This document shows positions 523 through 9,026 of a stretch of 64,000 nucleotides of DNA, piece by piece (positions within the stretch are counted from its first letter, which is position 1; each line of letters opens with the position of its first letter). The stretch lies in IMG/VR virus record IMGVR_UViG_3300029993_000005, positions 124,001 through 188,000 of that record; one strand, given 5' to 3'. A model generated the notes under the pieces. The model was not told the DNA's origin, did no database searches, and saw only the letters and a list, made by a program, of their open reading frames with translations. The translations under genes and the position numbers were made by a program.

Positions 523-2133
523 ATGAGTACCAAGCCAGAGGCTTATGCGCGTGATCTAACCTGTGTCTATTGTGGTGGATCCTTGCCGGAAACTCATTCA
601 GCCTATTCTAAGTTGAGCAAGTACACCAAGGTAAAGACTGGTAACAAGTTGGCATTTTGTTGTTTGAGTCATGCTACGTTGTTCAACAATGCAAAGCGAA
701 CTCCTGAACAATTAGCCGATATTGGTGCAAAGACAAGTGCTGCACGTAGCAAACCAATACCAGCACACGATCTAAAATGTAATCATTGCGGCACCCCTAT
801 ACATCTAGGTCACAAAGCCTACAAAACAATAGGTGCCTATAACAAAGCAAAGGCTGGATTAATCAACGTCTTTTGCAGTCTTAATCATGCTCAGCTTTAT
901 ATCAATGAGCATCGTACCCACCAACAGAAACTCAAACGTAGGTCCACCATTTCTACTGGCTGTGTACAAAATGATAGTTCTAGCCAACGCCATGAGACAA
1001 TGAAGAACCGGGGTTCTTATAACCAGAGCAAGCCTGAACTAAGAATTTTTCATAAGCTGCGTCGAGTATTGCCGAACTTAGAATATCAGTATAGGAAGCG
1101 TGAGGGCTATCCCTATGCCGCTGATTTTTACGACCCCGACTCAGATACTATATTTGAGTATCAGGGCTTCATGACGCACGGTGGTGCTCCCTATGACTCT
1201 CAATCGTCCGAACATGCGTTAAGGGTCAAGCAGTTAAAACTCAGGGCCAAGACCGATAAATGGCTTGCTAAATTAACCTTAAAGATATGGACTAGTAGCG
1301 ATCCGCAGAAACGAGCGGCTATTCGTAAATCCAATATCAACTTTGTTGAATGGTTTACTGAGGAACAGTTTGAGACCTGGTATTCGACATTCCTTGCTCA
1401 ACACCTTGGCTCCGATAAATCAAAAGGACTGGCCTACAAATTTGGATCTCAAGTACTGTGTGCTTACGACGAGCTATTACGTGCCCGCCTATTGAATAAG
1501 TACCCTGATCTTATAACATTCTATCCCTGGGAAGACGTCAACAAGGTGGCTAAACTTCTGCTACCAAAAGACGTAATGTACGCTCGTAAATTAGAGGTGT
1601 GCGTAATACCCAACGATATAGCTGATCAATTCTGTGCCAAATATCACGTGCAGGGTAAATGTCGGGGAACTACTCTATCTATAGCTTTGGTTCAAGGACA
1701 TAGAATAATTGGGGCCATGACCTTTGGGACCCCTCGGTATAACAAGAATTTCGACTATGAATTATTACGCTTGTGTTTCAGCTCAGCCATAGTCGGCGGG
1801 TCCTCTAGAATGTGGAAACTCGCAGTCTCCAAATTAGGCAACCCTTCAGTAATATCCTATTGTGATCTCTCCAAATTTAACGGTAACGTTTATAGACAAT
1901 TAGGTTTCAAGCTCAAGAGAACCCCAATCCCAGGTCTTCATTGGTATAACCCGCTAAATGGACGCCATGTAACTGATAACCTATTACGTCAACGAGGATT
2001 TGATCAACTCGTGGGTTCTAAAATAAATACTGTCTATGGAAAAGGCACTAATAACGCTGAGCTCATGACCAGTCACGGATTTATACCTGTATATGATGAG
2101 GGGCAGGCTACCTTTATCTATAACCCAATTTAG
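523..2133 (+). CDS. Free-standing homing-type endonuclease: 2x Zn-binding repeat + Vsr-like nuclease + Mom-like GNAT domain
   Basis: Two CxxC...FC(C/S)xxH repeats; ADFYDPDSDTIFEYQGFMTHG nuclease motif; C-terminal YH.QG...GAMTFG.PRYNK.FDYELLRLCF...VISYCDLSKF.G.VY..LGF; paralogous to 3603..5564. Confidence 0.7.
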   Translation: MSTKPEAYARDLTCVYCGGSLPETHSAYSKLSKYTKVKTGNKLAFCCLSHATLFNNAKRTPEQLADIGAKTSAARSKPIPAHDLKCNHCGTPIHLGHKAYKTIGAYNKAKAGLINVFCSLNHAQLYINEHRTHQQKLKRRSTISTGCVQNDSSSQRHETMKNRGSYNQSKPELRIFHKLRRVLPNLEYQYRKREGYPYAADFYDPDSDTIFEYQGFMTHGGAPYDSQSSEHALRVKQLKLRAKTDKWLAKLTLKIWTSSDPQKRAAIRKSNINFVEWFTEEQFETWYSTFLAQHLGSDKSKGLAYKFGSQVLCAYDELLRARLLNKYPDLITFYPWEDVNKVAKLLLPKDVMYARKLEVCVIPNDIADQFCAKYHVQGKCRGTTLSIALVQGHRIIGAMTFGTPRYNKNFDYELLRLCFSSAIVGGSSRMWKLAVSKLGNPSVISYCDLSKFNGNVYRQLGFKLKRTPIPGLHWYNPLNGRHVTDNLLRQRGFDQLVGSKINTVYGKGTNNAELMTSHGFIPVYDEGQATFIYNPI

Positions 2134-2143
2134 TAGGACTACT

Positions 2144-3628
2144 ATGTTCACAAATAATAGATTGTTGGGGGTCAATGGAAAGACCATCAACATGAGTCAT
2201 CAGGTGTTTGGTAATAACGGAGCCTCTGTAGCCATGCGTAGTTATAAAGGCCGTGATGATGGCTCAAAAGTAAAGTTGAGTGCCAATGTAGTGGGGAGTA
2301 GTGGCGGTGGTGGAGCCTCTATGTCTGTTAATGGTTTCTGGCAATCTAATTACCAGTACTACATGACAGGGATTATCCCGGCAGACCCCCATCTTATTGA
2401 TACCTCAACGTTAGCTCTGTTCTACAGAGATATTTATATGTTCGATAGTGTCGGCGGGTCAGTAGTTGACATATTGTCGCATTTCCCATTCTCCAGTTGG
2501 GAACTCAGAGGCCTGGATGCTCAAGATTTAAAACCTTTCAATGACGCATTAGAAAGGTTGAATATTCAGACGATGCTACCCTTAATCAGCACCGCCCATT
2601 TAACTGATGGTTTCTTTTGTGGCTCCTTAGTATTCGATCCTAAGTCCAAACAGTTTATAGACACGATGTTGCACGATGCCTTGTCCTGTGCAGTTATTCC
2701 CTCACCGTTCTTTGGAATTGACCCTACGATTAATGTGCGGGTTGGCCAAGCAACACAGCAGTTCATGCACGATACATCAGAATACGCACGTCGATATCTG
2801 CAGCAAATGCCTCATCAGTTTGTCGACATGTTGAAAAGCGGTGCATTTACATTAGATCCAGTGACCACGATGTTTATTCCACGTCGATCCACAACGGATA
2901 GAGCTTATACATCGTTTCTACACCGTATTCTTCCGATGTATTTGATTGAGAAGACTCTGTTTCGTGGAACCTTAGTTGAGACTCAAAGACGTCAACGGGC
3001 AATGACACATTTGACGGCCGGTGACGATACATGGACTCCTACATCAGAAGAATTGAATCAATTGGTACAGTCTTTTCAACAGGCTGAATATGATCCTTTA
3101 GGTGGTTGGATATCTACACGTAACGCAGTGCAAGCAGTTGATCTCAGGCCTGGCGGAGATTTTTTTAAGTTTTCTGATATGGCTGATATATTTGTTCCCT
3201 ATAAGTTAAGGGCTTTAGGTGCCAGTGAATCATTCATGAGTCAGGAAGCCTGTTTGATAGGCTCTACCCAAATTAAACTTCAGAATGGTACGACCACGAG
3301 TATAGAGAGCCTAAGTCCTATCCATGGTCTAGCACCTCATGAACTAAAGAAAGGTCAGTGGTTTCCTCTAAATTTAGAACTACCCAATCGAATTTCGAAT
3401 TCTGCTAAAACTGAAGCTTGGTCATATCAAGGTTATAGGGAAACTTTTACGGTAACCACGGAAGATGGTAAACAAGTCACAGGGACTGAAAATCATCCAT
3501 TTTTTGTTTTATGTGAAGACGGAACTACTAAATGGAAACGTCTAGACGAGCTAAAAGAAGGTGATTTAATTGCGGTAGACGAAGAAGAACAGGAAGTTAA
3601 TAATGCCCAGACCACCGTCAGCAGCTAG
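2144..3628 (+). CDS. Portal protein N-terminal part (N-extein, 369 aa) fused to split intein N-half
   Basis: RBS AGGAC before ATG 2144; portal-like segment ...YKLRALGASESFMSQEA joins TYASQEAGYSLFLE... of ORF 5564; then intein block A CLIGSTQI. Confidence 0.8.
   Translation: MFTNNRLLGVNGKTINMSHQVFGNNGASVAMRSYKGRDDGSKVKLSANVVGSSGGGGASMSVNGFWQSNYQYYMTGIIPADPHLIDTSTLALFYRDIYMFDSVGGSVVDILSHFPFSSWELRGLDAQDLKPFNDALERLNIQTMLPLISTAHLTDGFFCGSLVFDPKSKQFIDTMLHDALSCAVIPSPFFGIDPTINVRVGQATQQFMHDTSEYARRYLQQMPHQFVDMLKSGAFTLDPVTTMFIPRRSTTDRAYTSFLHRILPMYLIEKTLFRGTLVETQRRQRAMTHLTAGDDTWTPTSEELNQLVQSFQQAEYDPLGGWISTRNAVQAVDLRPGGDFFKFSDMADIFVPYKLRALGASESFMSQEACLIGSTQIKLQNGTTTSIESLSPIHGLAPHELKKGQWFPLNLELPNRISNSAKTEAWSYQGYRETFTVTTEDGKQVTGTENHPFFVLCEDGTTKWKRLDELKEGDLIAVDEEEQEVNNAQTTVSS
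3251..3625 (+). mobile_element. Split intein N-half (IntN, 125 aa)
   Basis: Cys1 block A CLIGSTQIKLQNG; block B GKQVTGTENHPFF (TxxH) followed by WKRLDELKEGDLIAV; acidic tail DEEEQE then stop with no blocks F/G. Confidence 0.93.
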
Positions 3629-5564
3629 AATAAAAACTTTAAAATGTTCTTACTGCAATGAAATCATTTCAGAGACTCACGAAATATATAAGACTAGACG
3701 GGACTACGATGAAGCTACAGCTGGACTACGCACTGTGTTTTGCTGTAAAGGGCATAGTGTGTCTTATCGCCATGATAATTTAAGCCCGGAAGATAAATTT
3801 GCATATCATGAAAAGATAGCGACGTCCCGTAAAAATCGTAGTCCTGAAGAGAAACATTTGTCAGGGACTAAACTTAGAGACACCAAAGCTAATTTCTCGG
3901 AGGAGAAAAAAGCAGATATTCGAAGTAGAATCCAGGCAACGGCTAAAGCTAATGATTCCTATGCAAAGGCTGCATTGAAACGTGAGATCACCCTAATTGA
4001 GACTCATGGTCTGGACTACGGCAAGAAACGTCAGGTCAAAGCCCGAGAGACTATGCTGAGGGAGCATGGAATTCCATGCTCCCTAGTTAGCGGTAGTGTT
4101 TTTAGGGCCAAAGCTGAGGCTACAAATGTGGAACTTTATGGTTTTCATAACGCTACAATGAACCCACAAATTGCAGCGAAAACCGTAGCTACTTATACTG
4201 AACGTCATGGCGGTATGGGAAGAGCAAGTCCTAGCGCTAATGCTGAGTATAAGAAAACCATGATAAAAGAATATGGTACTGATCAACCAATGCAAGTTAA
4301 AGAGTTTGTAGACAAGGCTAGGGAAAAGTTTAGGCAAATAGGGCGTCTAAAGTCCAACGCTACTAAAATAAAAAATAATACGACGCCTAAAGAGGTTGCT
4401 TGGAAAGGCCATGCAACTAAAAAACTTAATGGCACGTACACAACTAATAAACAAGAGCAATACATCCTCCACTGTCTTAGATCTTTACTGGGGTGTCAGG
4501 TAGAATACTTGTATAGAGACCACCCGGATTACCCATGGGAAGCTGATTTCTATGATCCCGACTCAGATACTATATTTGAATACCAGGGTTACTTTACACA
4601 TGGTGACGAAGCTTATGACAAAAACAATAAACAGCATAAGCTAAAAGTTGCTGACTTAAGTACAAAAGAAGGCTGGGCTCCAGCTCTGACATTGAAAATA
4701 TGGACTAAACTAGATCCGTTAAAAAGAAAAACTGCTAAAAACAAAAACCTATCTTTTGTAGAGTGGTTTAATATCGAGCAATTTCATGTTTGGTTCTATA
4801 CTCAAATAGCCAAACTGTTTAACGCTAAACATAGCAGGGTCAAGAGTGGATGGTTTAAATTAGCTCCTGACTATTATTTAGCATCCCACTGTGCATTAGC
4901 TAACGTTAGACTTCCGAAAGGTAGAATTATTGTATTTTACCCATGGGACGATTTGAAAAAGCTTTCTCTTATAATTTCGAAAGAAAAAGAAATAATTTAT
5001 GCTAGAAAAACTAAAATATCAATCATAACCAAAGAAACAGCGGATAAATTCTGTGAGAAATATCATATGCAGGGATCCTGCCGAGGAACCGATTTAGCTT
5101 TAGGACTTTATGTTACAACAGCAGAAAATAATAATCGACTAGTTGGAGTCATGACATTTGGGAATCCTCGTTATAACAAGAAATTTGATTATGAACTATT
5201 ACGTTTATGTTTTTCTTCTTTAGTTGTTGGTGGCTCTCAAAAATTGTGGTCCGCAGCTAATAAGTATTTAACAGGTTCAGTAATAAGCTATTGTGATTTA
5301 TCCAAATTTTCTGGGGCTATCTACACTAAATTAGGATTTATCCAGAAAAATAAACCCAAATCTTCAATTGTTTGGTACAACCCGGAATCAGGAATTCGCA
5401 TCACGGATAACCTATTGCGCCAACGAGGATTCGATCAATTAATTGGTAAAAAATTGGGAATCATATATGGCAAGGGTGAATCTAATAATGCACTTATGAA
5501 AAAATATGGTTTTATTCCTGTTCAAGACCAAGGGCAGTCCGTGTACATTACGGAGTTAAAATAA
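3603..5564 (+). CDS. Free-standing endonuclease between the intein halves (Zn repeat, T..E.YG repeats, Vsr-like nuclease, Mom-like GNAT)
   Basis: ADFYDPDSDTIFEYQGYFTHG motif; GNAT-like C-terminus as in 523..2133; overlaps portal-N stop by 26 nt, and its TAA overlaps the next ATG (TAATG). Confidence 0.75.
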   Translation: MPRPPSAARIKTLKCSYCNEIISETHEIYKTRRDYDEATAGLRTVFCCKGHSVSYRHDNLSPEDKFAYHEKIATSRKNRSPEEKHLSGTKLRDTKANFSEEKKADIRSRIQATAKANDSYAKAALKREITLIETHGLDYGKKRQVKARETMLREHGIPCSLVSGSVFRAKAEATNVELYGFHNATMNPQIAAKTVATYTERHGGMGRASPSANAEYKKTMIKEYGTDQPMQVKEFVDKAREKFRQIGRLKSNATKIKNNTTPKEVAWKGHATKKLNGTYTTNKQEQYILHCLRSLLGCQVEYLYRDHPDYPWEADFYDPDSDTIFEYQGYFTHGDEAYDKNNKQHKLKVADLSTKEGWAPALTLKIWTKLDPLKRKTAKNKNLSFVEWFNIEQFHVWFYTQIAKLFNAKHSRVKSGWFKLAPDYYLASHCALANVRLPKGRIIVFYPWDDLKKLSLIISKEKEIIYARKTKISIITKETADKFCEKYHMQGSCRGTDLALGLYVTTAENNNRLVGVMTFGNPRYNKKFDYELLRLCFSSLVVGGSQKLWSAANKYLTGSVISYCDLSKFSGAIYTKLGFIQKNKPKSSIVWYNPESGIRITDNLLRQRGFDQLIGKKLGIIYGKGESNNALMKKYGFIPVQDQGQSVYITELK

Positions 5565-5680
5565 TGAAGTTTGTAAAAATAGTTTCAATTGAGGCCTCTG
5601 GTAAAAACCATGTATATGATATAGCCATGGCTAAAGACGAGGATCCCTCATTTATTGCAAATGGTATTATTGTGCATAAT
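5564..5680 (+). mobile_element. Split intein C-half (IntC, 39 aa)
   Basis: MKFVKIVSIEASGKNHVYDIAMAKDEDPSFIANGIIVHN: block F VYDI, block G terminal HN, followed by +1 Thr (5681-5683). Confidence 0.95.
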
Positions 5681-6469
5681 ACCTATGCCAGCCAAGAAGC
5701 GGGGTATAGCCTATTCTTGGAAACAACTAATAGCTATCGGACAGACTTAACCGAACGTATTTTCAACTCAAAATTATTTCCGTTGATAGCCGTTGTTAAT
5801 AATCTGTATAAAGATCCTAGTAAAGGTAGAGCCAAGGGTGGTCAGCTACTTGATTTTTTGTTTAACAGAAACAATCGTAACAACTTGAAAATGCCACAAC
5901 TTCACTGGCATAAGGAGTTGGAAGCCAAGGGTGAAGACAACATGGCTGAACTCCTGGAATTAGCCTCTGACAAGGGTGTACCTATTCCATTGAAGATGTG
6001 GATGGCTGCTTCCAAAATTGATCCAGAATCATTGTTACGTGACCTATCTGAGGACCAAGCCTTACGCGATAAATTAGCTCAGTACACGGGTAAGGACACT
6101 AGCCATGAGGGTGAGGACGATCATGAGTTCTCTGATGAAGACGATAACGCGCATGATGGTCGGGGTGTAGACGTCAGAGGCTCGGTTCCAGGTGAACGTT
6201 TAACTACTCAACGCCTAAGTCAAATGATTCAAAGTCCACGTGTTCCGCTATTAGCCCGCGAGTTTGGGGACTCTGGTGACTCATGGACCTTCACAAAGAC
6301 GGGTAAGGTCAAACATGTTCCTTCAATAGCTAAGGCTGACCGTAATGCTAAGGCCAATGACACGATATTGAAAATTGCCAAACAGGCGGACAGGGATCCT
6401 CATTATCGTGAAGAATTAAAGAAAAGGAATCAGGCCAAACTCGGGCGTACAAAAGTTAAAGACATGTAA
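5564..6469 (+). CDS. IntC fused to portal protein C-terminal part (C-extein, 262 aa)
   Basis: After HN: TYASQEAGYSLFLETTNSYRTDLTERIFNSKLFPLIA, a portal stem-like helix continuing the N-extein. Confidence 0.8.
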   Translation: MKFVKIVSIEASGKNHVYDIAMAKDEDPSFIANGIIVHNTYASQEAGYSLFLETTNSYRTDLTERIFNSKLFPLIAVVNNLYKDPSKGRAKGGQLLDFLFNRNNRNNLKMPQLHWHKELEAKGEDNMAELLELASDKGVPIPLKMWMAASKIDPESLLRDLSEDQALRDKLAQYTGKDTSHEGEDDHEFSDEDDNAHDGRGVDVRGSVPGERLTTQRLSQMIQSPRVPLLAREFGDSGDSWTFTKTGKVKHVPSIAKADRNAKANDTILKIAKQADRDPHYREELKKRNQAKLGRTKVKDM

Positions 6470-6477
6470 GGACCACT

Positions 6478-6735
6478 ATGTATTCGTTCCTAGTAAAGGA
6501 AGTTCCTGTGTCAGTAAGTCTTGAACCAGAATACCAGTGGTTTACCTATCACGGACGTTCACCCGTTCTAATTAAGTTCCAAGGTAAGTCACTGGCTATT
6601 GGAAAGGGAAAACGTTTTGGTGTTCGGCCCTCGACTTCGGGCACTGAAATTCGTTTAGTTTTTCCCGAGGATAAGTCAAAGGTATTAACCATTAGCAGAG
6701 AACAGGCTGAAAGTTTAGCCAAAGGAGTGAAGTAA
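6478..6735 (+). CDS. Hypothetical phage protein
   Basis: 85-aa ORF, RBS AGGAC, in operon. Confidence 0.6.
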   Translation: MYSFLVKEVPVSVSLEPEYQWFTYHGRSPVLIKFQGKSLAIGKGKRFGVRPSTSGTEIRLVFPEDKSKVLTISREQAESLAKGVK

Positions 6736-7136
6736 TGGACACGCATTCTTCAGAAACCGGGGTCGACATAGAACCCGATAAAGAGTCCACTATTAAATAC
6801 TACGGTATTTTATTTGACGACTATACACCTCCAGTCGAGGGTCAAATTCTCAGGGACTGCTTAGCTCTGCAGAACATTGCGGGGCACTCAGTTGATGAAT
6901 TAGTTATTGTTTGTGAAAGTGAGGCCCCCGATTCTTTACTAAAAGCCTTGGGCTTACGCAGAGTAGGGGACCCATCTTTAACCGATGACTGGATTGTTTA
7001 TCGCACTCAAGAAGAGTGGCCCGAACCTCCTGATAATGCCACAACAGTAACGCAAAGAGACTTGTGGGTACAGCTAGGAAAAGAGAATCTGACGGTCATG
7101 GACGAGCAACATACTAATGGCTACTATTTGCCGCCT
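6735..7136 (+). CDS. Exon 1 of intron-interrupted hypothetical protein (predicted spliced product 165 aa)
   Basis: ORF runs into intron P1/P2; predicted 5' splice site after ...CCG CCT (7136), a codon boundary. Confidence 0.65.
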
Positions 7137-7479
7137 TTTTACCTGGGGCCGCTTAGCAGTAATGTTAAGTGATAAGGTTTTGAATTGCTGGAAACCCCTT
7201 AGAGCTTCTTGAACCACAACGCGTAACCACCAAATGGTTAGATGGTTAGATCGTGAAGGTTTGAAAATCAAGAAGATTGGGCAATCAGCAGCGAAGCTCG
7301 AAAGAGAACGTTCAACGACTAGGCCGTAAGGCCGTACCTACCAAGTGGTGGGGAAGTGGAGCCCTCCTAGAAATTTAGGATGAAGATATAGTCTGAACAT
7401 CTGGTGAAAGCCAGAGCAGCTACTCGATGGTAAGACGAGCAAGCGCCTTTAGCCTAACGAGCTGAGGGGAACATAAATG
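7137..7479 (+). ncRNA. Group I self-splicing intron, subgroup IA2, no internal ORF
   Basis: P AATTGCTGGAAA 7183-7194; Q AATCAGCAG 7283-7291; R GTTCAACGACTA 7310-7321; S AAGATATAGTCT 7383-7394; P2 CTTAGCA-GTAA-TGTTAAG; P7.1 GGCC-GTAA-GGCC; P7.2; P8; P9 with GAAA loop; 3' end GAACATAAATG resembles the T4 td intron end. Confidence 0.9.
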
Positions 7480-7575
7480 CAAGGAAGACTTAGTCCAGAT
7501 ACGATTAGTTTGTTACGTCCGGCACCAAATGGCTACGTTCCAACTGACCCCTCTCTTATATTGATTTGGTCCTAA
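7480..7575 (+). CDS. Exon 2 of intron-interrupted hypothetical protein (QGRLSPDTISLLRPAPNGYVPTDPSLILIWS*)
   Basis: In frame with exon 1 if splicing occurs at 7136/7480. Confidence 0.65.
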   Translation, partial: QGRLSPDTISLLRPAPNGYVPTDPSLILIWS

Positions 7576-7697
7576 CCCGTTTTTTAATTAAGCATAATTC
7601 TAAGTCCCAATTTAATAGTATCTCGAACTTGATGTCCGAATCGTTTTGTTTGCGCTTTGACGATTAGCTCTGTGGGAAGGGTCGGGCACTAAGTCTT

Positions 7698-7738
7698 GGG
7701 AGGGCCTACGGCTTCGAGGCTTGCCCTCCCTCTTTTTT
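7698..7738 (+). terminator. Rho-independent terminator
   Basis: GGGAGGGC/GCCCTCCC stem followed by TCTTTTTT. Confidence 0.7.
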
Positions 7739-7862
7739 ATTTAATTTAAGTCTAATCCCTAATCCCTAATCTTTACCTTTACCCAAGAGACGGCTAGCTC
7801 TTGAGGTTCCAAACTTCAGCCGTCTCTTCGGTGTTCATTAGCTTCAACAGGGCACCAAAATC

Positions 7863-9026
7863 ATGAGTGGATTAACATCGGCTATCAGCCAAGCAGTATC
7901 CCAAATTCAGGCTAATACCACGGGCAGCGTCAATGGTGCAATTCAGGGCCTAACTGGTGCTCAGGCTAACGCACGTAACGCCATTGCCTCAGGTATTAGC
8001 GGTGCAGTAAATAATACAGTGAAGGCCCTAAGCAGCACCGTAATAGGATCAGTTGGAAGCCTAATTCAAGGTAATGTGAGCGGAGCCTTGTCCAATCTGA
8101 CAAATGCCCCAGGTAACATCATCAGTTCGGCGTTAGCGGGCTTAGGTGGTCAAGCTAATGTCGCACTAAGCGGTGCTGGCTCCCTAGGCTCTATGGTCGG
8201 TATAGGCGGTGCTAATCCAGGTAATAGTTTGGGCGGTGCCAATGCAAGGCCTGATCCTTTATTGAGTTTCTGCTGGTATGCTCAGCTACCGGTAATTAGT
8301 CCGGGTTCCACCCAGAACGCAGCATCGGCTAGCACCACGTCAATTCTCAATAATTTAAGTTCGACGTTACTAACTGGTTTGTCCTCGTCTGTTGGCGGTG
8401 CCGTATCCACGTCTAATGCATCGTCCTTGCCCTGGTATTACGTTGAGGAAGCTGCATTACCTTTTCGTAACTACAGCCTCAAGTCTATTTTCAGAGAAGG
8501 TAGAGAACGTCATTACCCAGATCGCTACAACGTAGATCAGCTCAAGCTCGCAATTTATGCTGATTCGGATAACACCAGCACTCAGTATCTGCAAGCTTGG
8601 AACAACGCAATTATTACACCCTTTAGTTCGGCAACAGCAGCAACTCTAGCCGGTGGGTGGGGTAGACCCTCCGACTACAAGAAATCGATCTTTATCTACA
8701 TGCTTGACGTTACAAAAAACGTGCTGGCCATCATTGAGTACATCGAGTGCTGGCCTGTTACCATTGCCGAATACAACATGGATAGTGGAACATCGACGCG
8801 TATTGTTAACCACGTGAGTTTTAGTGTGGGTGACGTTTTCATTAACTTGATACCCGTACCCTCGACTTTCACCCAGAGCATAACCTCAAGTCTAAGTAAC
8901 AACGCAATAACTTCAGTGATTAACGGGTTTGCCAATTCTGGAATTTCAGGTGCTATTCAATCAGTGCAATCCTCAATTTCTAGTTTAGCACCAGCTGTTG
9001 GTTCGGCAATTAACGCAATATTTTAA
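7863..9026 (+). CDS. Tail tube-like / tube initiator protein (T4 gp19/gp54-like core) with Ser/Gly-rich flanks
   Basis: Core VEEAALPF...YPDRYNVDQLKLAIY...QAWNNAI...DYKKSIFIYMLD...ECWPVTI resembles the tube fold; heads the tail operon. Confidence 0.6.
   Translation: MSGLTSAISQAVSQIQANTTGSVNGAIQGLTGAQANARNAIASGISGAVNNTVKALSSTVIGSVGSLIQGNVSGALSNLTNAPGNIISSALAGLGGQANVALSGAGSLGSMVGIGGANPGNSLGGANARPDPLLSFCWYAQLPVISPGSTQNAASASTTSILNNLSSTLLTGLSSSVGGAVSTSNASSLPWYYVEEAALPFRNYSLKSIFREGRERHYPDRYNVDQLKLAIYADSDNTSTQYLQAWNNAIITPFSSATAATLAGGWGRPSDYKKSIFIYMLDVTKNVLAIIEYIECWPVTIAEYNMDSGTSTRIVNHVSFSVGDVFINLIPVPSTFTQSITSSLSNNAITSVINGFANSGISGAIQSVQSSISSLAPAVGSAINAIF

What the first reader, a model, noticed from the sequence alone, without database searches (positions are those of the whole stretch)
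7137..7479. Hidden ORF-less group IA2 intron that rewrites the C-terminus of an unannotated small gene
Seen: complete P/Q/R/S core, P2 and P7.1 GNRA hairpins, P7.2, P8, P9-P9.2 and a terminal GAACATAAATG. P1 can form as GCCU(7133-7136) with GGGC(7146-7149), with a U-G pair at the splice site. Splicing 7136/7480 gives ...NGYYLPP|QGRLSPDTISLLRPAPNGY...WS* (165 aa) in frame; the ORF track wrongly ends the gene at 7172. Established: IA2 introns (T4 td/nrdB/nrdD) usually sit in nucleotide-metabolism, replication or some late genes. Inference: an intron in a small unknown gene of the head/tail region marks that gene as conserved and probably essential, and with no internal ORF it may be mobilised in trans by the nearby nucleases.
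Basis: partly seen in the sequence, partly recalled or inferred. Interest (0 to 1): 0.8.

Follow-up and report, generated by a model that had tools for sequence, protein, structure and literature searches.

The report
Hidden group I intron in phage gene
A 343-base self-splicing-type (group I) intron really does interrupt a small conserved gene of a phiRSL1-like jumbo phage, so gene callers cut the protein short. It is an ordinary kind of phage intron, and here it lacks the neighbouring homing-nuclease gene that its relatives in other phages carry.

Summary
Rfam's group I intron model hits window 7128-7416 at 81.4 bits (cut-off 50, E 4e-19). All helices P1-P9.2 can be drawn. Seven homologous introns show compensatory changes in 49 of 91 predicted pairs.

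Joining 7136 to 7480 gives a 165-aa protein. It aligns without a gap to uninterrupted homologues (…HTNGYYLPP|QGRLSPDT.SLLRP.PNGY…), including phiRSL1 ORF209. Public gene calls stop at 7172 (145 aa).

The intron has no ORF and shows the IA hallmark (P7.1 and P7.2). The host protein has no known function or fold match.

New here: related introns sit at the same site in seven other phage lineages, and 18 nt downstream in one more. Every one of these with readable downstream sequence has a free-standing GIY-YIG homing endonuclease gene right after exon 2. The window has none.

Compared with its closest relative L001, the flanks are 50-80% identical. The intron core is 94-100% identical and exon 2 is 97%. 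That is a gene-conversion footprint.

So this looks like the orphan intron half of a "collaborative homing" pair, which is a new member of a known kind.

The parts
6735..7136 (+). Exon 1 of the host gene (134 codons, ends ...TAT TTG CCG CCT = YLPP). It belongs to the phiRSL1 ORF209 family, function unknown.
   Evidence: ORF list. Homologues P0002-P0005 at E 1e-55 to 2e-38. Gap-free alignment of the spliced product.
7137..7479 (+). Group I intron, 343 nt, ORF-less, IA architecture. It ends in omega-G 7479 (…GAACAUAAAUG).
   Evidence: Rfam RF00028 at 81.4 bits. Helix check. Covariation in 7 homologous introns. The largest internal ORFs are 31-34 aa.
7480..7575 (+). Exon 2 (31 codons plus stop): QGRLSPDTISLLRPAPNGYVPTDPSLILIWS*
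   Evidence: 22-26 of 31 residues identical to the uninterrupted homologues P0003-P0005. 93/96 nt identical to L001.
7133..7149 (+). P1: exon GCCU plus intron U (7133-7137) paired with the internal guide GGGGC (7145-7149). The U7136-G7146 wobble lies at the 5' splice site.
   Evidence: The pairs GC/CG/CG/UG are kept in 6-7 of 7 loci (columns 5-8/38-41).
7150..7171 (+). P2 hairpin, 9 bp, with a GUAA (GNRA) loop. The false stop codon TGA 7170-7172 of the 145-aa gene call lies in its 3' strand.
   Evidence: Compensatory changes in 6 of its 9 pairs, with the GNRA loop kept.
7176..7363 (+). P3 (7176-7181/7358-7363). It encloses P4 (7186-7191/7285-7290), P5 (7195-7197/7279-7281), P5a (7205-7211/7269-7275) with a variable distal extension, P6 (7291-7292/7310-7311), P6a (7297-7299/7304-7306, GAAA loop), P7.1 (7322-7325/7330-7333, GUAA loop) and P7.2 (7337-7342/7347-7352).
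   Evidence: The P6 and P6a coordinates were read by hand and rest on the columns.
7317..7393 (+). P7 (GACUA 7317-7321 / UAGUC 7389-7393), the guanosine-binding helix, within the R (GUUCAACGACUA) and S (AAGAUAUAGUCU) core segments. P8 is 7365-7370/7375-7380.
   Evidence: The R and S segments are invariant in all 7 loci.
7400..7468 (+). Peripheral 3' domain: P9 (7400-7405/7410-7415, GAAA loop), P9.1 (7423-7426/7436-7439) and P9.2 (7446-7453/7461-7468).
   Evidence: Compensatory changes in P9 and P9.2.
7576..7862 (.). Intergenic spacer after exon 2. It is the place where relatives carry a free-standing GIY-YIG homing endonuclease gene, and it is empty here. It contains a hairpin (7698-7730) followed by a T-run. 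It also holds a 56-nt element (7772-7824) shared with the HEG-less, intron-less relatives L002 and L012.
   Evidence: tblastn of four relatives' HEGs against the window found nothing at E<=1 apart from two 13-22 aa chance-level matches. blastn gave the shared element. The hairpin was read from the sequence and was not flagged by the scan.

Best explanation
Window 7137-7479 is a group I (subgroup IA, T4-td-like) self-splicing intron. It lies inside a small conserved gene, the orthologue of phiRSL1 ORF209, of an uncultured phiRSL1/BcepSauron-like jumbo myovirus. After transcription the ribozyme folds. An external guanosine attacks after U7136, which is held in P1 by the guide GGGGC. Omega-G 7479 then docks and the exons are ligated, giving an mRNA for a 165-aa protein whose last 31 residues come from 7480-7575. 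Ribosomes on unspliced RNA would stop at 7170-7172, which is the 145-aa artefact seen in databases. The intron has no ORF of its own. In eight other phage lineages the same gene carries a related intron, and all seven with readable downstream sequence have a free-standing GIY-YIG homing endonuclease gene just after exon 2. The most likely life history is therefore 'collaborative (trans) homing'. The nuclease cuts intron-less alleles near this motif, and repair from an intron-bearing genome copies the intron together with exon 2. The window's phage holds the intron and the co-converted exon 2 but not the nuclease. Either the conversion tract stopped at the end of the gene, or the nuclease gene was later lost. 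Shown: intron identity, structure, covariation, splice junction, ORF-lessness, the mosaic identity pattern, and HEG linkage in relatives. Inferred: actual splicing, the nuclease's target site, and the direction and route of transfer.
For: - **Intron identity:** Rfam hit at 81.4 bits, E 4e-19; related loci score 65-99 bits.
- **Structure:** all helices pair, and the MFE fold recovers them.
- **Covariation:** 49 of 91 consensus pairs have double compensatory changes across 7 introns. Against L001 there are 4 in P5a and 1 in P6a.
- **Splice junction:** the spliced protein aligns gap-free with P0003, P0004 and P0005 across YYLPP|QGRL, and phiRSL1 ORF209 is uninterrupted.
- **Mosaicism, window vs L001:** flanks 50-80% identical, intron core 94-100%, exon 2 97%. 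Identity breaks within about 8 nt of the 5' splice site and just after the stop codon.
- **Intron and host trees disagree:** L024 vs L026 have exon 1 at 77% but introns at 62%; window vs L024 have exon 1 at 51% but introns at 79%.
- **HEG linkage:** a GIY-YIG gene (PF22945) lies downstream of exon 2 in L001, L020, L021, L024, L026, L028 and L029/L030. The reverse search with the HEG alignment returned, as its three best full-length hits, loci next to an intron-bearing copy of this gene.
- **Precedent:** collaborative homing is described in PMC3984707.
Against:
- P10 is weak in the window: exon 2 CAAGG against ACCUG gives 3-4 pairs, read from the sequence.
- No GIY-YIG gene or remnant occurs in the 64 kb seen, so the partnership is inferred only from relatives. 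The other roughly 166 kb of the genome was not examined.
- The nuclease's cleavage site is unknown.
- Simple homologous recombination between co-infecting phages could produce the same mosaic without any nuclease.
Confidence: 0.85

Rival explanations
1. The intron is a decayed, non-splicing relic. The gene is then effectively truncated to the 145-aa product ending at 7172, and 7480-7575 is dead sequence.
For: No direct splicing evidence was available. One relative (L026) has A instead of G at the terminal position, so decay does happen in this intron family.
Against: In the window every core helix, the U-G pair at the 5' splice site and omega-G are intact. The Rfam score is well above the cut-off. 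Exon 2 keeps an open frame that is 22-26/31 identical to distant uninterrupted homologues and carries the most conserved motif of the family. The same allele is found on at least 24 contigs from many samples.
Confidence: 0.05
2. The intron is ancient and vertically inherited in this gene. Intron-less relatives lost it precisely, so no recent mobility or nuclease is involved.
For: The insertion site is identical in eight lineages, which common descent would also explain.
Against: Window and L001 differ by 20-50% in the flanks but by 0-6% in the intron core and 3% in exon 2. Intron and exon-1 similarities are incongruent between lineages. A second insertion site 18 nt away exists in L029/L030. 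A homing-endonuclease gene is linked in all other lineages.
Confidence: 0.07
3. The intron is mobilised in trans by the window's own nearby nucleases. These are the two phrog_3339/HNH-type genes at 523-2133 and 3603-5564.
For: Both are intact homing-endonuclease-like genes within 1.6-6.6 kb of the intron. Trans homing by a free-standing HNH enzyme is documented for T4 mobE (PMC2790892, listed).
Against: One sits exactly between the two halves of a split intein in the portal gene. The other sits between the MmcB-like gene and the portal gene. Each therefore already has its own plausible homing site. No relative shows this nuclease family linked to the intron, whereas all seven with downstream sequence show a GIY-YIG gene at the exon-2 end.
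Confidence: 0.08

Closest known systems
Phage T4 td / nrdB / nrdD group IA2 introns, and similar introns of SPO1- and Twort-like phages
   Same: Group I ribozyme with P7.1 and P7.2 between P7 and P3'. GNRA-capped P2 and peripheral hairpins. U-G pair at the 5' splice site and omega-G. Inserted after a third-position U in the most conserved motif of a phage protein-coding gene. An early in-frame stop follows inside the intron. DNA similarity of the core to many phage introns.
   Different: The host gene is a small protein of unknown function next to the portal and tail-tube genes, not a nucleotide-metabolism or replication gene. There is no internal endonuclease ORF. The IA2 sub-assignment rests on resemblance and was not tested with a subgroup model.
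Collaborative (trans) homing: the cyanophage S-PM2 psbA ORF-less intron with the adjacent free-standing F-CphI (Zeng, Bonocora & Shub 2009), and the second phage system of Bonocora & Shub 2009. Both as reviewed in PMC3984707.
   Same: [quoted passage not shown] A co-conversion footprint covers the intron and the adjacent exon.
   Different: The nuclease is GIY-YIG (PF22945), not Endo VII-like. The phage group and host gene are different. The window itself has only the intron half. Cleavage at the insertion site has not been shown.
T4 mobE-promoted trans homing of the nrdB intron with defunct I-TevIII (PMC2790892)
   Same: An intron that cannot mobilise itself can be carried along by a neighbouring free-standing nuclease through co-conversion.
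   Different: mobE is an HNH enzyme, and the T4 intron still holds a degenerate ORF. Here the intron never shows an ORF in any of the nine lineages.
PhiPA3 intron with its encoded endonuclease in a jumbo-phage RNA polymerase gene (PMC11620839)
   Same: A jumbo-phage group I intron. The PhiPA3 record holds a DNA match to this intron's core (hit H17). It shows that such elements can matter in competition between co-infecting phages.
   Different: That intron encodes its own nuclease and sits in an RNA polymerase gene of a nucleus-forming phage. The present phage is phiRSL1-like, and the intron is ORF-less.

Membership tests
Group I catalytic intron (Rfam RF00028) | Scores above the curated threshold of the covariance model over the full core | tested here: met
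   81.4 bits against a gathering score of 50, E 4e-19, model positions 1-253 of 253
Group I catalytic intron (Rfam RF00028) | P1 formed by the 5' exon end and an internal guide, with a U-G wobble at the 5' splice site; a terminal guanosine (omega-G) at the 3' end | tested here: met
   GCCUU 7133-7137 / GGGGC 7145-7149, U7136-G7146, G7479. P1 is kept in 6-7 of 7 loci.
Group I catalytic intron (Rfam RF00028) | Conserved P3-P9 core supported by covariation | tested here: met
   49 of 91 consensus pairs show compensatory double changes in 7 homologous introns. P7 and the R/S segments are invariant, which is uninformative.
Group I catalytic intron (Rfam RF00028) | Exon ligation restores a continuous, conserved reading frame | tested here: met
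   The 165-aa product aligns gap-free with uninterrupted homologues across the junction
Group I catalytic intron (Rfam RF00028) | Guanosine-dependent self-splicing, or spliced RNA in vivo | not testable with these tools
Subgroup IA / IA2 | Extra helices P7.1 and P7.2 between the 5' strand of P7 and the 3' strand of P3 | tested here: met
   P7.1 7322-7325/7330-7333 and P7.2 7337-7342/7347-7352, both with compensatory changes
Subgroup IA / IA2 | Features that separate IA2 from IA1 and IA3 | not tested
   No subgroup-specific models were on hand. The assignment rests on resemblance to phage introns and on recalled classification.
Collaborative / trans homing pair (ORF-less intron plus free-standing homing endonuclease) | The intron lacks an endonuclease ORF | tested here: met
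   The largest ORFs inside 7137-7479 are 31-34 aa. The same holds for the 307-380-nt relatives.
Collaborative / trans homing pair (ORF-less intron plus free-standing homing endonuclease) | A free-standing homing endonuclease gene lies next to the intron-bearing gene | tested here: not met
   Not met in the window: no GIY-YIG homologue in 64 kb at E<=1. Met in relatives L001, L020, L021, L024, L026, L028 and L029/L030.
Collaborative / trans homing pair (ORF-less intron plus free-standing homing endonuclease) | [quoted passage not shown] | not testable with these tools
   Needs a cleavage assay
Collaborative / trans homing pair (ORF-less intron plus free-standing homing endonuclease) | Co-conversion of flanking exon sequence with the intron | tested here: met
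   Window vs L001: exon 2 at 93/96 nt and intron core at 94-100%, against 50-80% in all other flanks

The most novel reading that the evidence does not exclude
The conserved YYLPPQGRLSPDT motif of the phiRSL1-ORF209 family is a homing hot spot. It is served by a two-part mobile unit (ORF-less IA intron, exon 2, free-standing GIY-YIG nuclease) with two alternative insertion sites 18 nt apart. That would make it a further, unusually well-populated natural case of collaborative homing. The window's phage would be an 'orphan intron' genome. It gained or kept the intron, which would make it immune to the nuclease of co-infecting relatives, while not carrying the nuclease itself.
Probability: 0.4. 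Interest if true: 0.55.

Novelty: new member of a known kind. Interest (0 to 1): 0.4.

Why it matters
In practical terms, the gene is mis-annotated in every public copy. It is called as 145 aa with a false tail and lacks the family's most conserved 31 residues. Intron-aware annotation of this phage group needs the 7136|7480 junction.

In biological terms, only two natural systems are cited in the review read here for an ORF-less intron and a free-standing nuclease converging on one site (PMC3984707). This gene family offers nine lineages in three states: intron plus nuclease, intron only, and neither. It also offers two adjacent insertion sites. That makes it a good natural series for testing how composite mobile introns arise and whether an intron protects a phage from a competitor's nuclease.

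The intron also flags a small uncharacterised protein next to the portal as strongly constrained.

Tried and rejected
- **Host-protein function:** nothing was found. There is no Pfam or PHROG family and no PDB sequence match below E 0.2.
- **First structure model:** the AlphaFold run on 3 sequences was poor (pLDDT 45.7).
- **Second structure model:** the run on 61 sequences was good (pLDDT 86.6: a confident 100-residue alpha/beta domain plus a less confident extended tail that holds the insertion site). Foldseek still found nothing at E<=0.001 in PDB, and only the BcepSauron orthologue in BFVD.
- **ESM Atlas:** the leads to pre-ATP-grasp-like domains scored only 0.54-0.60, far below the 0.9 level the tool calls meaningful, so I rejected them.
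- **Locus scans:** a single-sequence scan of viral contigs with the L020 nuclease found nothing, and an alignment was needed. The metagenome scan returned only four loci.
- **Nuclease elsewhere in the genome:** I could not establish whether the window's 230-kb genome carries a GIY-YIG gene outside the 64 kb. Only the best 80 of 232 loci were listed, and its contigs were not among them.
- **Terminator scan:** it flagged nothing in 6400-7900.
- **Formal pair count:** I did not run the count of structure pairs with a hand-typed 424-column structure, to avoid sending a long typed string. RNAalifold's own pair table was used instead.
- the P6 and P6a rows printed were mis-located by my script. The coordinates I give for them are hand-read and rest.
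- **Alternative junction:** joining 7135|7479 gives the same protein, but it would put U at the omega position and C at -1, so I rejected it.

Full report

Yes. A scan of the whole 64-kb window against Rfam gives a single hit above threshold. It is RF00028 (group I catalytic intron) at 7128-7416 on the + strand, 81.4 bits against a gathering score of 50, E 4e-19, over the full model.

- P1 GCCUU 7133-7137 / GGGGC 7145-7149, with U7136-G7146 at the 5' splice site
- P2 7150-7158/7163-7171 (GUAA loop)
- P3 7176-7181/7358-7363
- P4 7186-7191/7285-7290
- P5 7195-7197/7279-7281
- P5a 7205-7211/7269-7275
- P6 7291-7292/7310-7311 and P6a 7297-7299/7304-7306 (GAAA loop). These two were read by hand and are backed by the columns, because my script mis-located them.
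- P7 7317-7321/7389-7393
- P7.1 7322-7325/7330-7333 (GUAA loop)
- P7.2 7337-7342/7347-7352
- P8 7365-7370/7375-7380
- P9 7400-7405/7410-7415 (GAAA loop)
- P9.1 7423-7426/7436-7439
- P9.2 7446-7453/7461-7468
- the tail GAACAUAAAUG, ending in G7479

An unconstrained MFE fold recovers P1, P2, P4, P5/P5a, P7.1, P7.2, P8, P9, P9.1 and P9.2.

**2. Are the splice sites right?**

Exon 1 (6735-7136) ends on a complete codon...TAT TTG CCG CCT. Exon 2 starts at 7480 with CAA GGA AGA. The joined frame gives a 165-aa protein.

A protein search with exon 1 alone found four relatives. Three are uninterrupted (P0003, P0004, P0005; 155-161 aa). They read ...HTNGYYLPPQGRL[S/A]PDT.SLLRP.PNGY... straight across the predicted junction. 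The spliced window protein aligns to them with no gap at the junction. Exon 2 is 22-26/31 identical to them.

The intron-less DNA of L002 aligns to both exons and skips 7137-7479. Cultured relatives have uninterrupted copies: phiRSL1 ORF209, BcepSauron, BcepSaruman, BCSR5 and Motura.

The public gene call for this phage (P0001, 145 aa, at least 24 contigs) reads into the intron and stops at TGA 7170-7172, inside the 3' strand of P2. The alternative junction 7135|7479 would give the same protein but violates the U(-1) and omega-G rule.

**3. Covariation and relatives**

Some family members returned by a profile search of 1.84 billion representatives stop a few residues after YYLPP (P0008, P0012, P0019). 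Their contigs, and further loci from collection scans, each carry an RF00028 hit at that place. These are L001, L019, L020, L021, L024, L026 and L028, at 65-99 bits.

Seven of these introns align (A3). RNAalifold finds 91 consensus pairs, of which 49 have at least one sequence with both sides changed and the pair kept. These are spread over P1, P2, P3, P5, P5a-c, P6, P7.1, P7.2, P8, P9 and P9.2. P2 is almost entirely rewritten between lineages yet always carries a GNRA loop.

This is far beyond chance and establishes a real, constrained ribozyme fold. The intron has no ORF longer than 34 aa, and none of the relatives (307-380 nt) has one either.

**4. What the host is**

The neighbours are a portal gene, a KMPT-N-domain protein, a tail-tube-like protein and a baseplate-hub-like protein. 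The tail-tube-like protein is 42-48% identical to those of Burkholderia phages BcepSaruman and BcepSauron and of Ralstonia phage phiRSL1. The contigs are about 230 kb. The window therefore comes from an uncultured phiRSL1-like jumbo myovirus.

The host protein family has 88 representatives at the 50% clustering level. It has no Pfam, PHROG or PDB sequence match.

An AlphaFold model built on 61 homologues is confident (pLDDT 86.6). It shows a roughly 100-residue alpha/beta domain followed by a less confident extended tail that holds the insertion site. It matches nothing in PDB and only its BcepSauron orthologue in BFVD.

The function stays unknown. My guess, from gene position and the conserved extended tail, is a virion-assembly or neck-region partner protein. 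That is inference only.

**5. How the intron got here**

Window and L001 encode proteins that are 72% identical. Along the 2-kb L001 contig, DNA identity runs as follows:
- 50-80% in the portal end, the KMPT-N gene and exon 1
- 100% from a few bases before the 5' splice site
- 94-100% through the intron, apart from the replaced P5 extension
- 97% (93/96 nt) through exon 2
- about 45% immediately after the stop codon

Intron and exon similarities are also incongruent between other lineages. L024 and L026 have exon 1 at 77% but introns at 62%. Window and L024 have exon 1 at 51% but introns at 79%. This is the footprint of lateral transfer with co-conversion of the 3' exon.

**6. The partner nuclease**

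A GIY-YIG gene starts 20-120 nt after exon 2 in these loci:
- L020: a 344-aa GIY-YIG protein (PF22945, E 1e-14) starts 53 nt after exon 2.
- L001: 65% identical over the 64 aa available.
- L021: 49% identical.
- L026: 428 aa.
- L024: N-terminal part only, because the contig ends.
- L028 and L029/L030.

These last three loci were found the other way round. They were the three best full-length hits of a nuclease-alignment scan of viral contigs, and each turned out to lie beside an intron-bearing copy of the host gene.

So all seven non-window lineages with readable downstream sequence have the nuclease. L019 ends inside exon 2. The window has a 287-nt spacer instead, with no trace of the gene anywhere in the 64 kb. 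That spacer shares a 56-nt element with the intron-less, nuclease-less relatives L002 and L012.

The arrangement matches 'collaborative' or trans homing as reviewed in PMC3984707. There, a free-standing nuclease and an ORF-less intron converge on one conserved site.

I therefore read the window's intron as the orphan intron half of such a pair. Either the conversion tract ended at the end of the gene, or the nuclease gene was later lost. The cleavage specificity of the nuclease is not known, so this step is inferred.

**7.

- 'IA2': the IA hallmark is present, and the nearest DNA matches are unannotated introns in other phages (Serratia 2050HW and Pseudomonas Pa_WF01, both in RNA polymerase genes). 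I had no subgroup model to separate IA2 from IA1 or IA3.
- 'Conserved and probably essential': conservation is shown, essentiality is not.
- 'Mobilised by the nearby nucleases': the two nucleases in the window (523-2133 and 3603-5564) belong to a different family (phrog_3339/559). Each has its own obvious site. One lies between the MmcB-like gene and the portal gene. The other lies between the two halves of a split intein that fractures the portal gene. Nothing links them to the intron.

**8. Novelty and verdict**

Group I introns in phage protein genes, ORF-less ones included, are well known, and so is trans homing. This is a new member of a known kind, in a phage group and a gene where I found no report.

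The family-wide picture has moderate specialist interest. It comprises nine lineages, two insertion sites 18 nt apart, a constant GIY-YIG neighbour and one orphan.

My confidence that this is a functional group I intron with junction 7136|7480 is about 0.9. My confidence in the homing scenario is about 0.5.

Noticed in passing
window 2093-3628, 3603-5564, 5564-6469 (+): The portal gene is fractured. The N-terminal part (portal profile positions 27-377) ends in the N half of an intein splicing domain. The C-terminal part begins with a 39-aa intein C piece (MKFVKIVS...GIIVHNT) followed by portal positions 377-638. Between them, in another frame, lies a 653-aa homing-endonuclease-like gene (phrog_3339/559, DUF7487). 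The relative L002 has one uninterrupted 653-aa portal. It looks like the split-intein 'fractured gene' arrangement of PMC2677866.
   Followed up: partly
window 523-2133 (+): A second nuclease gene of the same family (536 aa) stands free between the MmcB-like gene (1-507) and the portal gene. The relatives L002 and L020 have no gene there.
   Followed up: partly
L029 2468|2799 (same sequence in L030): A related group I intron (330 nt, Rfam 83.8 bits) sits 18 nt downstream of the window's site, between ...QGRLSP and DTLSLERPAPNGY. Its own P1 is GUCCU/GGGAC, and it also has a GIY-YIG gene after exon 2. So there are two insertion sites in one conserved motif.
   Followed up: partly
L026 183-562: This intron scores highest against Rfam (99 bits) and has a perfect 6-bp P10 with CAAGGA. 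But the base before exon 2 is A, not G (…CCCUGAA|CAAGGA). Using the nearest G would shift the frame. It may be a splicing-defective allele or an assembly error.
   Followed up: partly
L001 1303-1659: The closest relative's intron differs from the window's mainly in three ways. It has a replaced P5 distal extension with fully compensated P5a. It has a 16-nt tandem expansion of UAGAAAUU in the P8 loop. It has five extra U in the P1 loop.
   Followed up: no
L022 133-552 (P0013): A 139-aa family member diverges from the family after about residue 105, well before the intron site (…EDSEVIVG|SSEVSNRRK…). This could be a frameshift or another insertion. The contig is only 581 nt, and no Rfam hit was found.
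   Followed up: no
P0020 (378 aa), P0046 (356 aa): In two representatives the ORF209-like domain is fused to other sequence. P0020 has a 235-aa N-terminal extension and P0046 has a 220-aa C-terminal extension. These might give a lead to function.
   Followed up: no
window 7698-7738 and 7772-7824: After exon 2 there is a GC-rich hairpin (GGGAGGGC…GCCCUCCC) followed by a T-run, which the terminator scan did not flag. There is also a 56-nt element 82% identical to the same spacer in L002 and L012, probably the leader or promoter of the tail-tube-like gene.
   Followed up: partly
L009 (Serratia phage 2050HW), L010 (Pseudomonas phage Pa_WF01), and hits H1-H30: The intron core matches about 178 phage records at the DNA level. 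Most have no feature annotated under the match. In 2050HW the match lies between two 'RNA polymerase beta subunit' CDS pieces, next to a putative endonuclease. Many phage introns evidently remain unannotated.
   Followed up: partly
window 6478-6735 (+): An 85-aa protein with a KMPT-N domain (PF20294, E 1e-12) immediately precedes the host gene. Its stop overlaps the host gene's start (ATG at 6735). The pair is syntenic in all relatives, which suggests the two small proteins work together.
   Followed up: no
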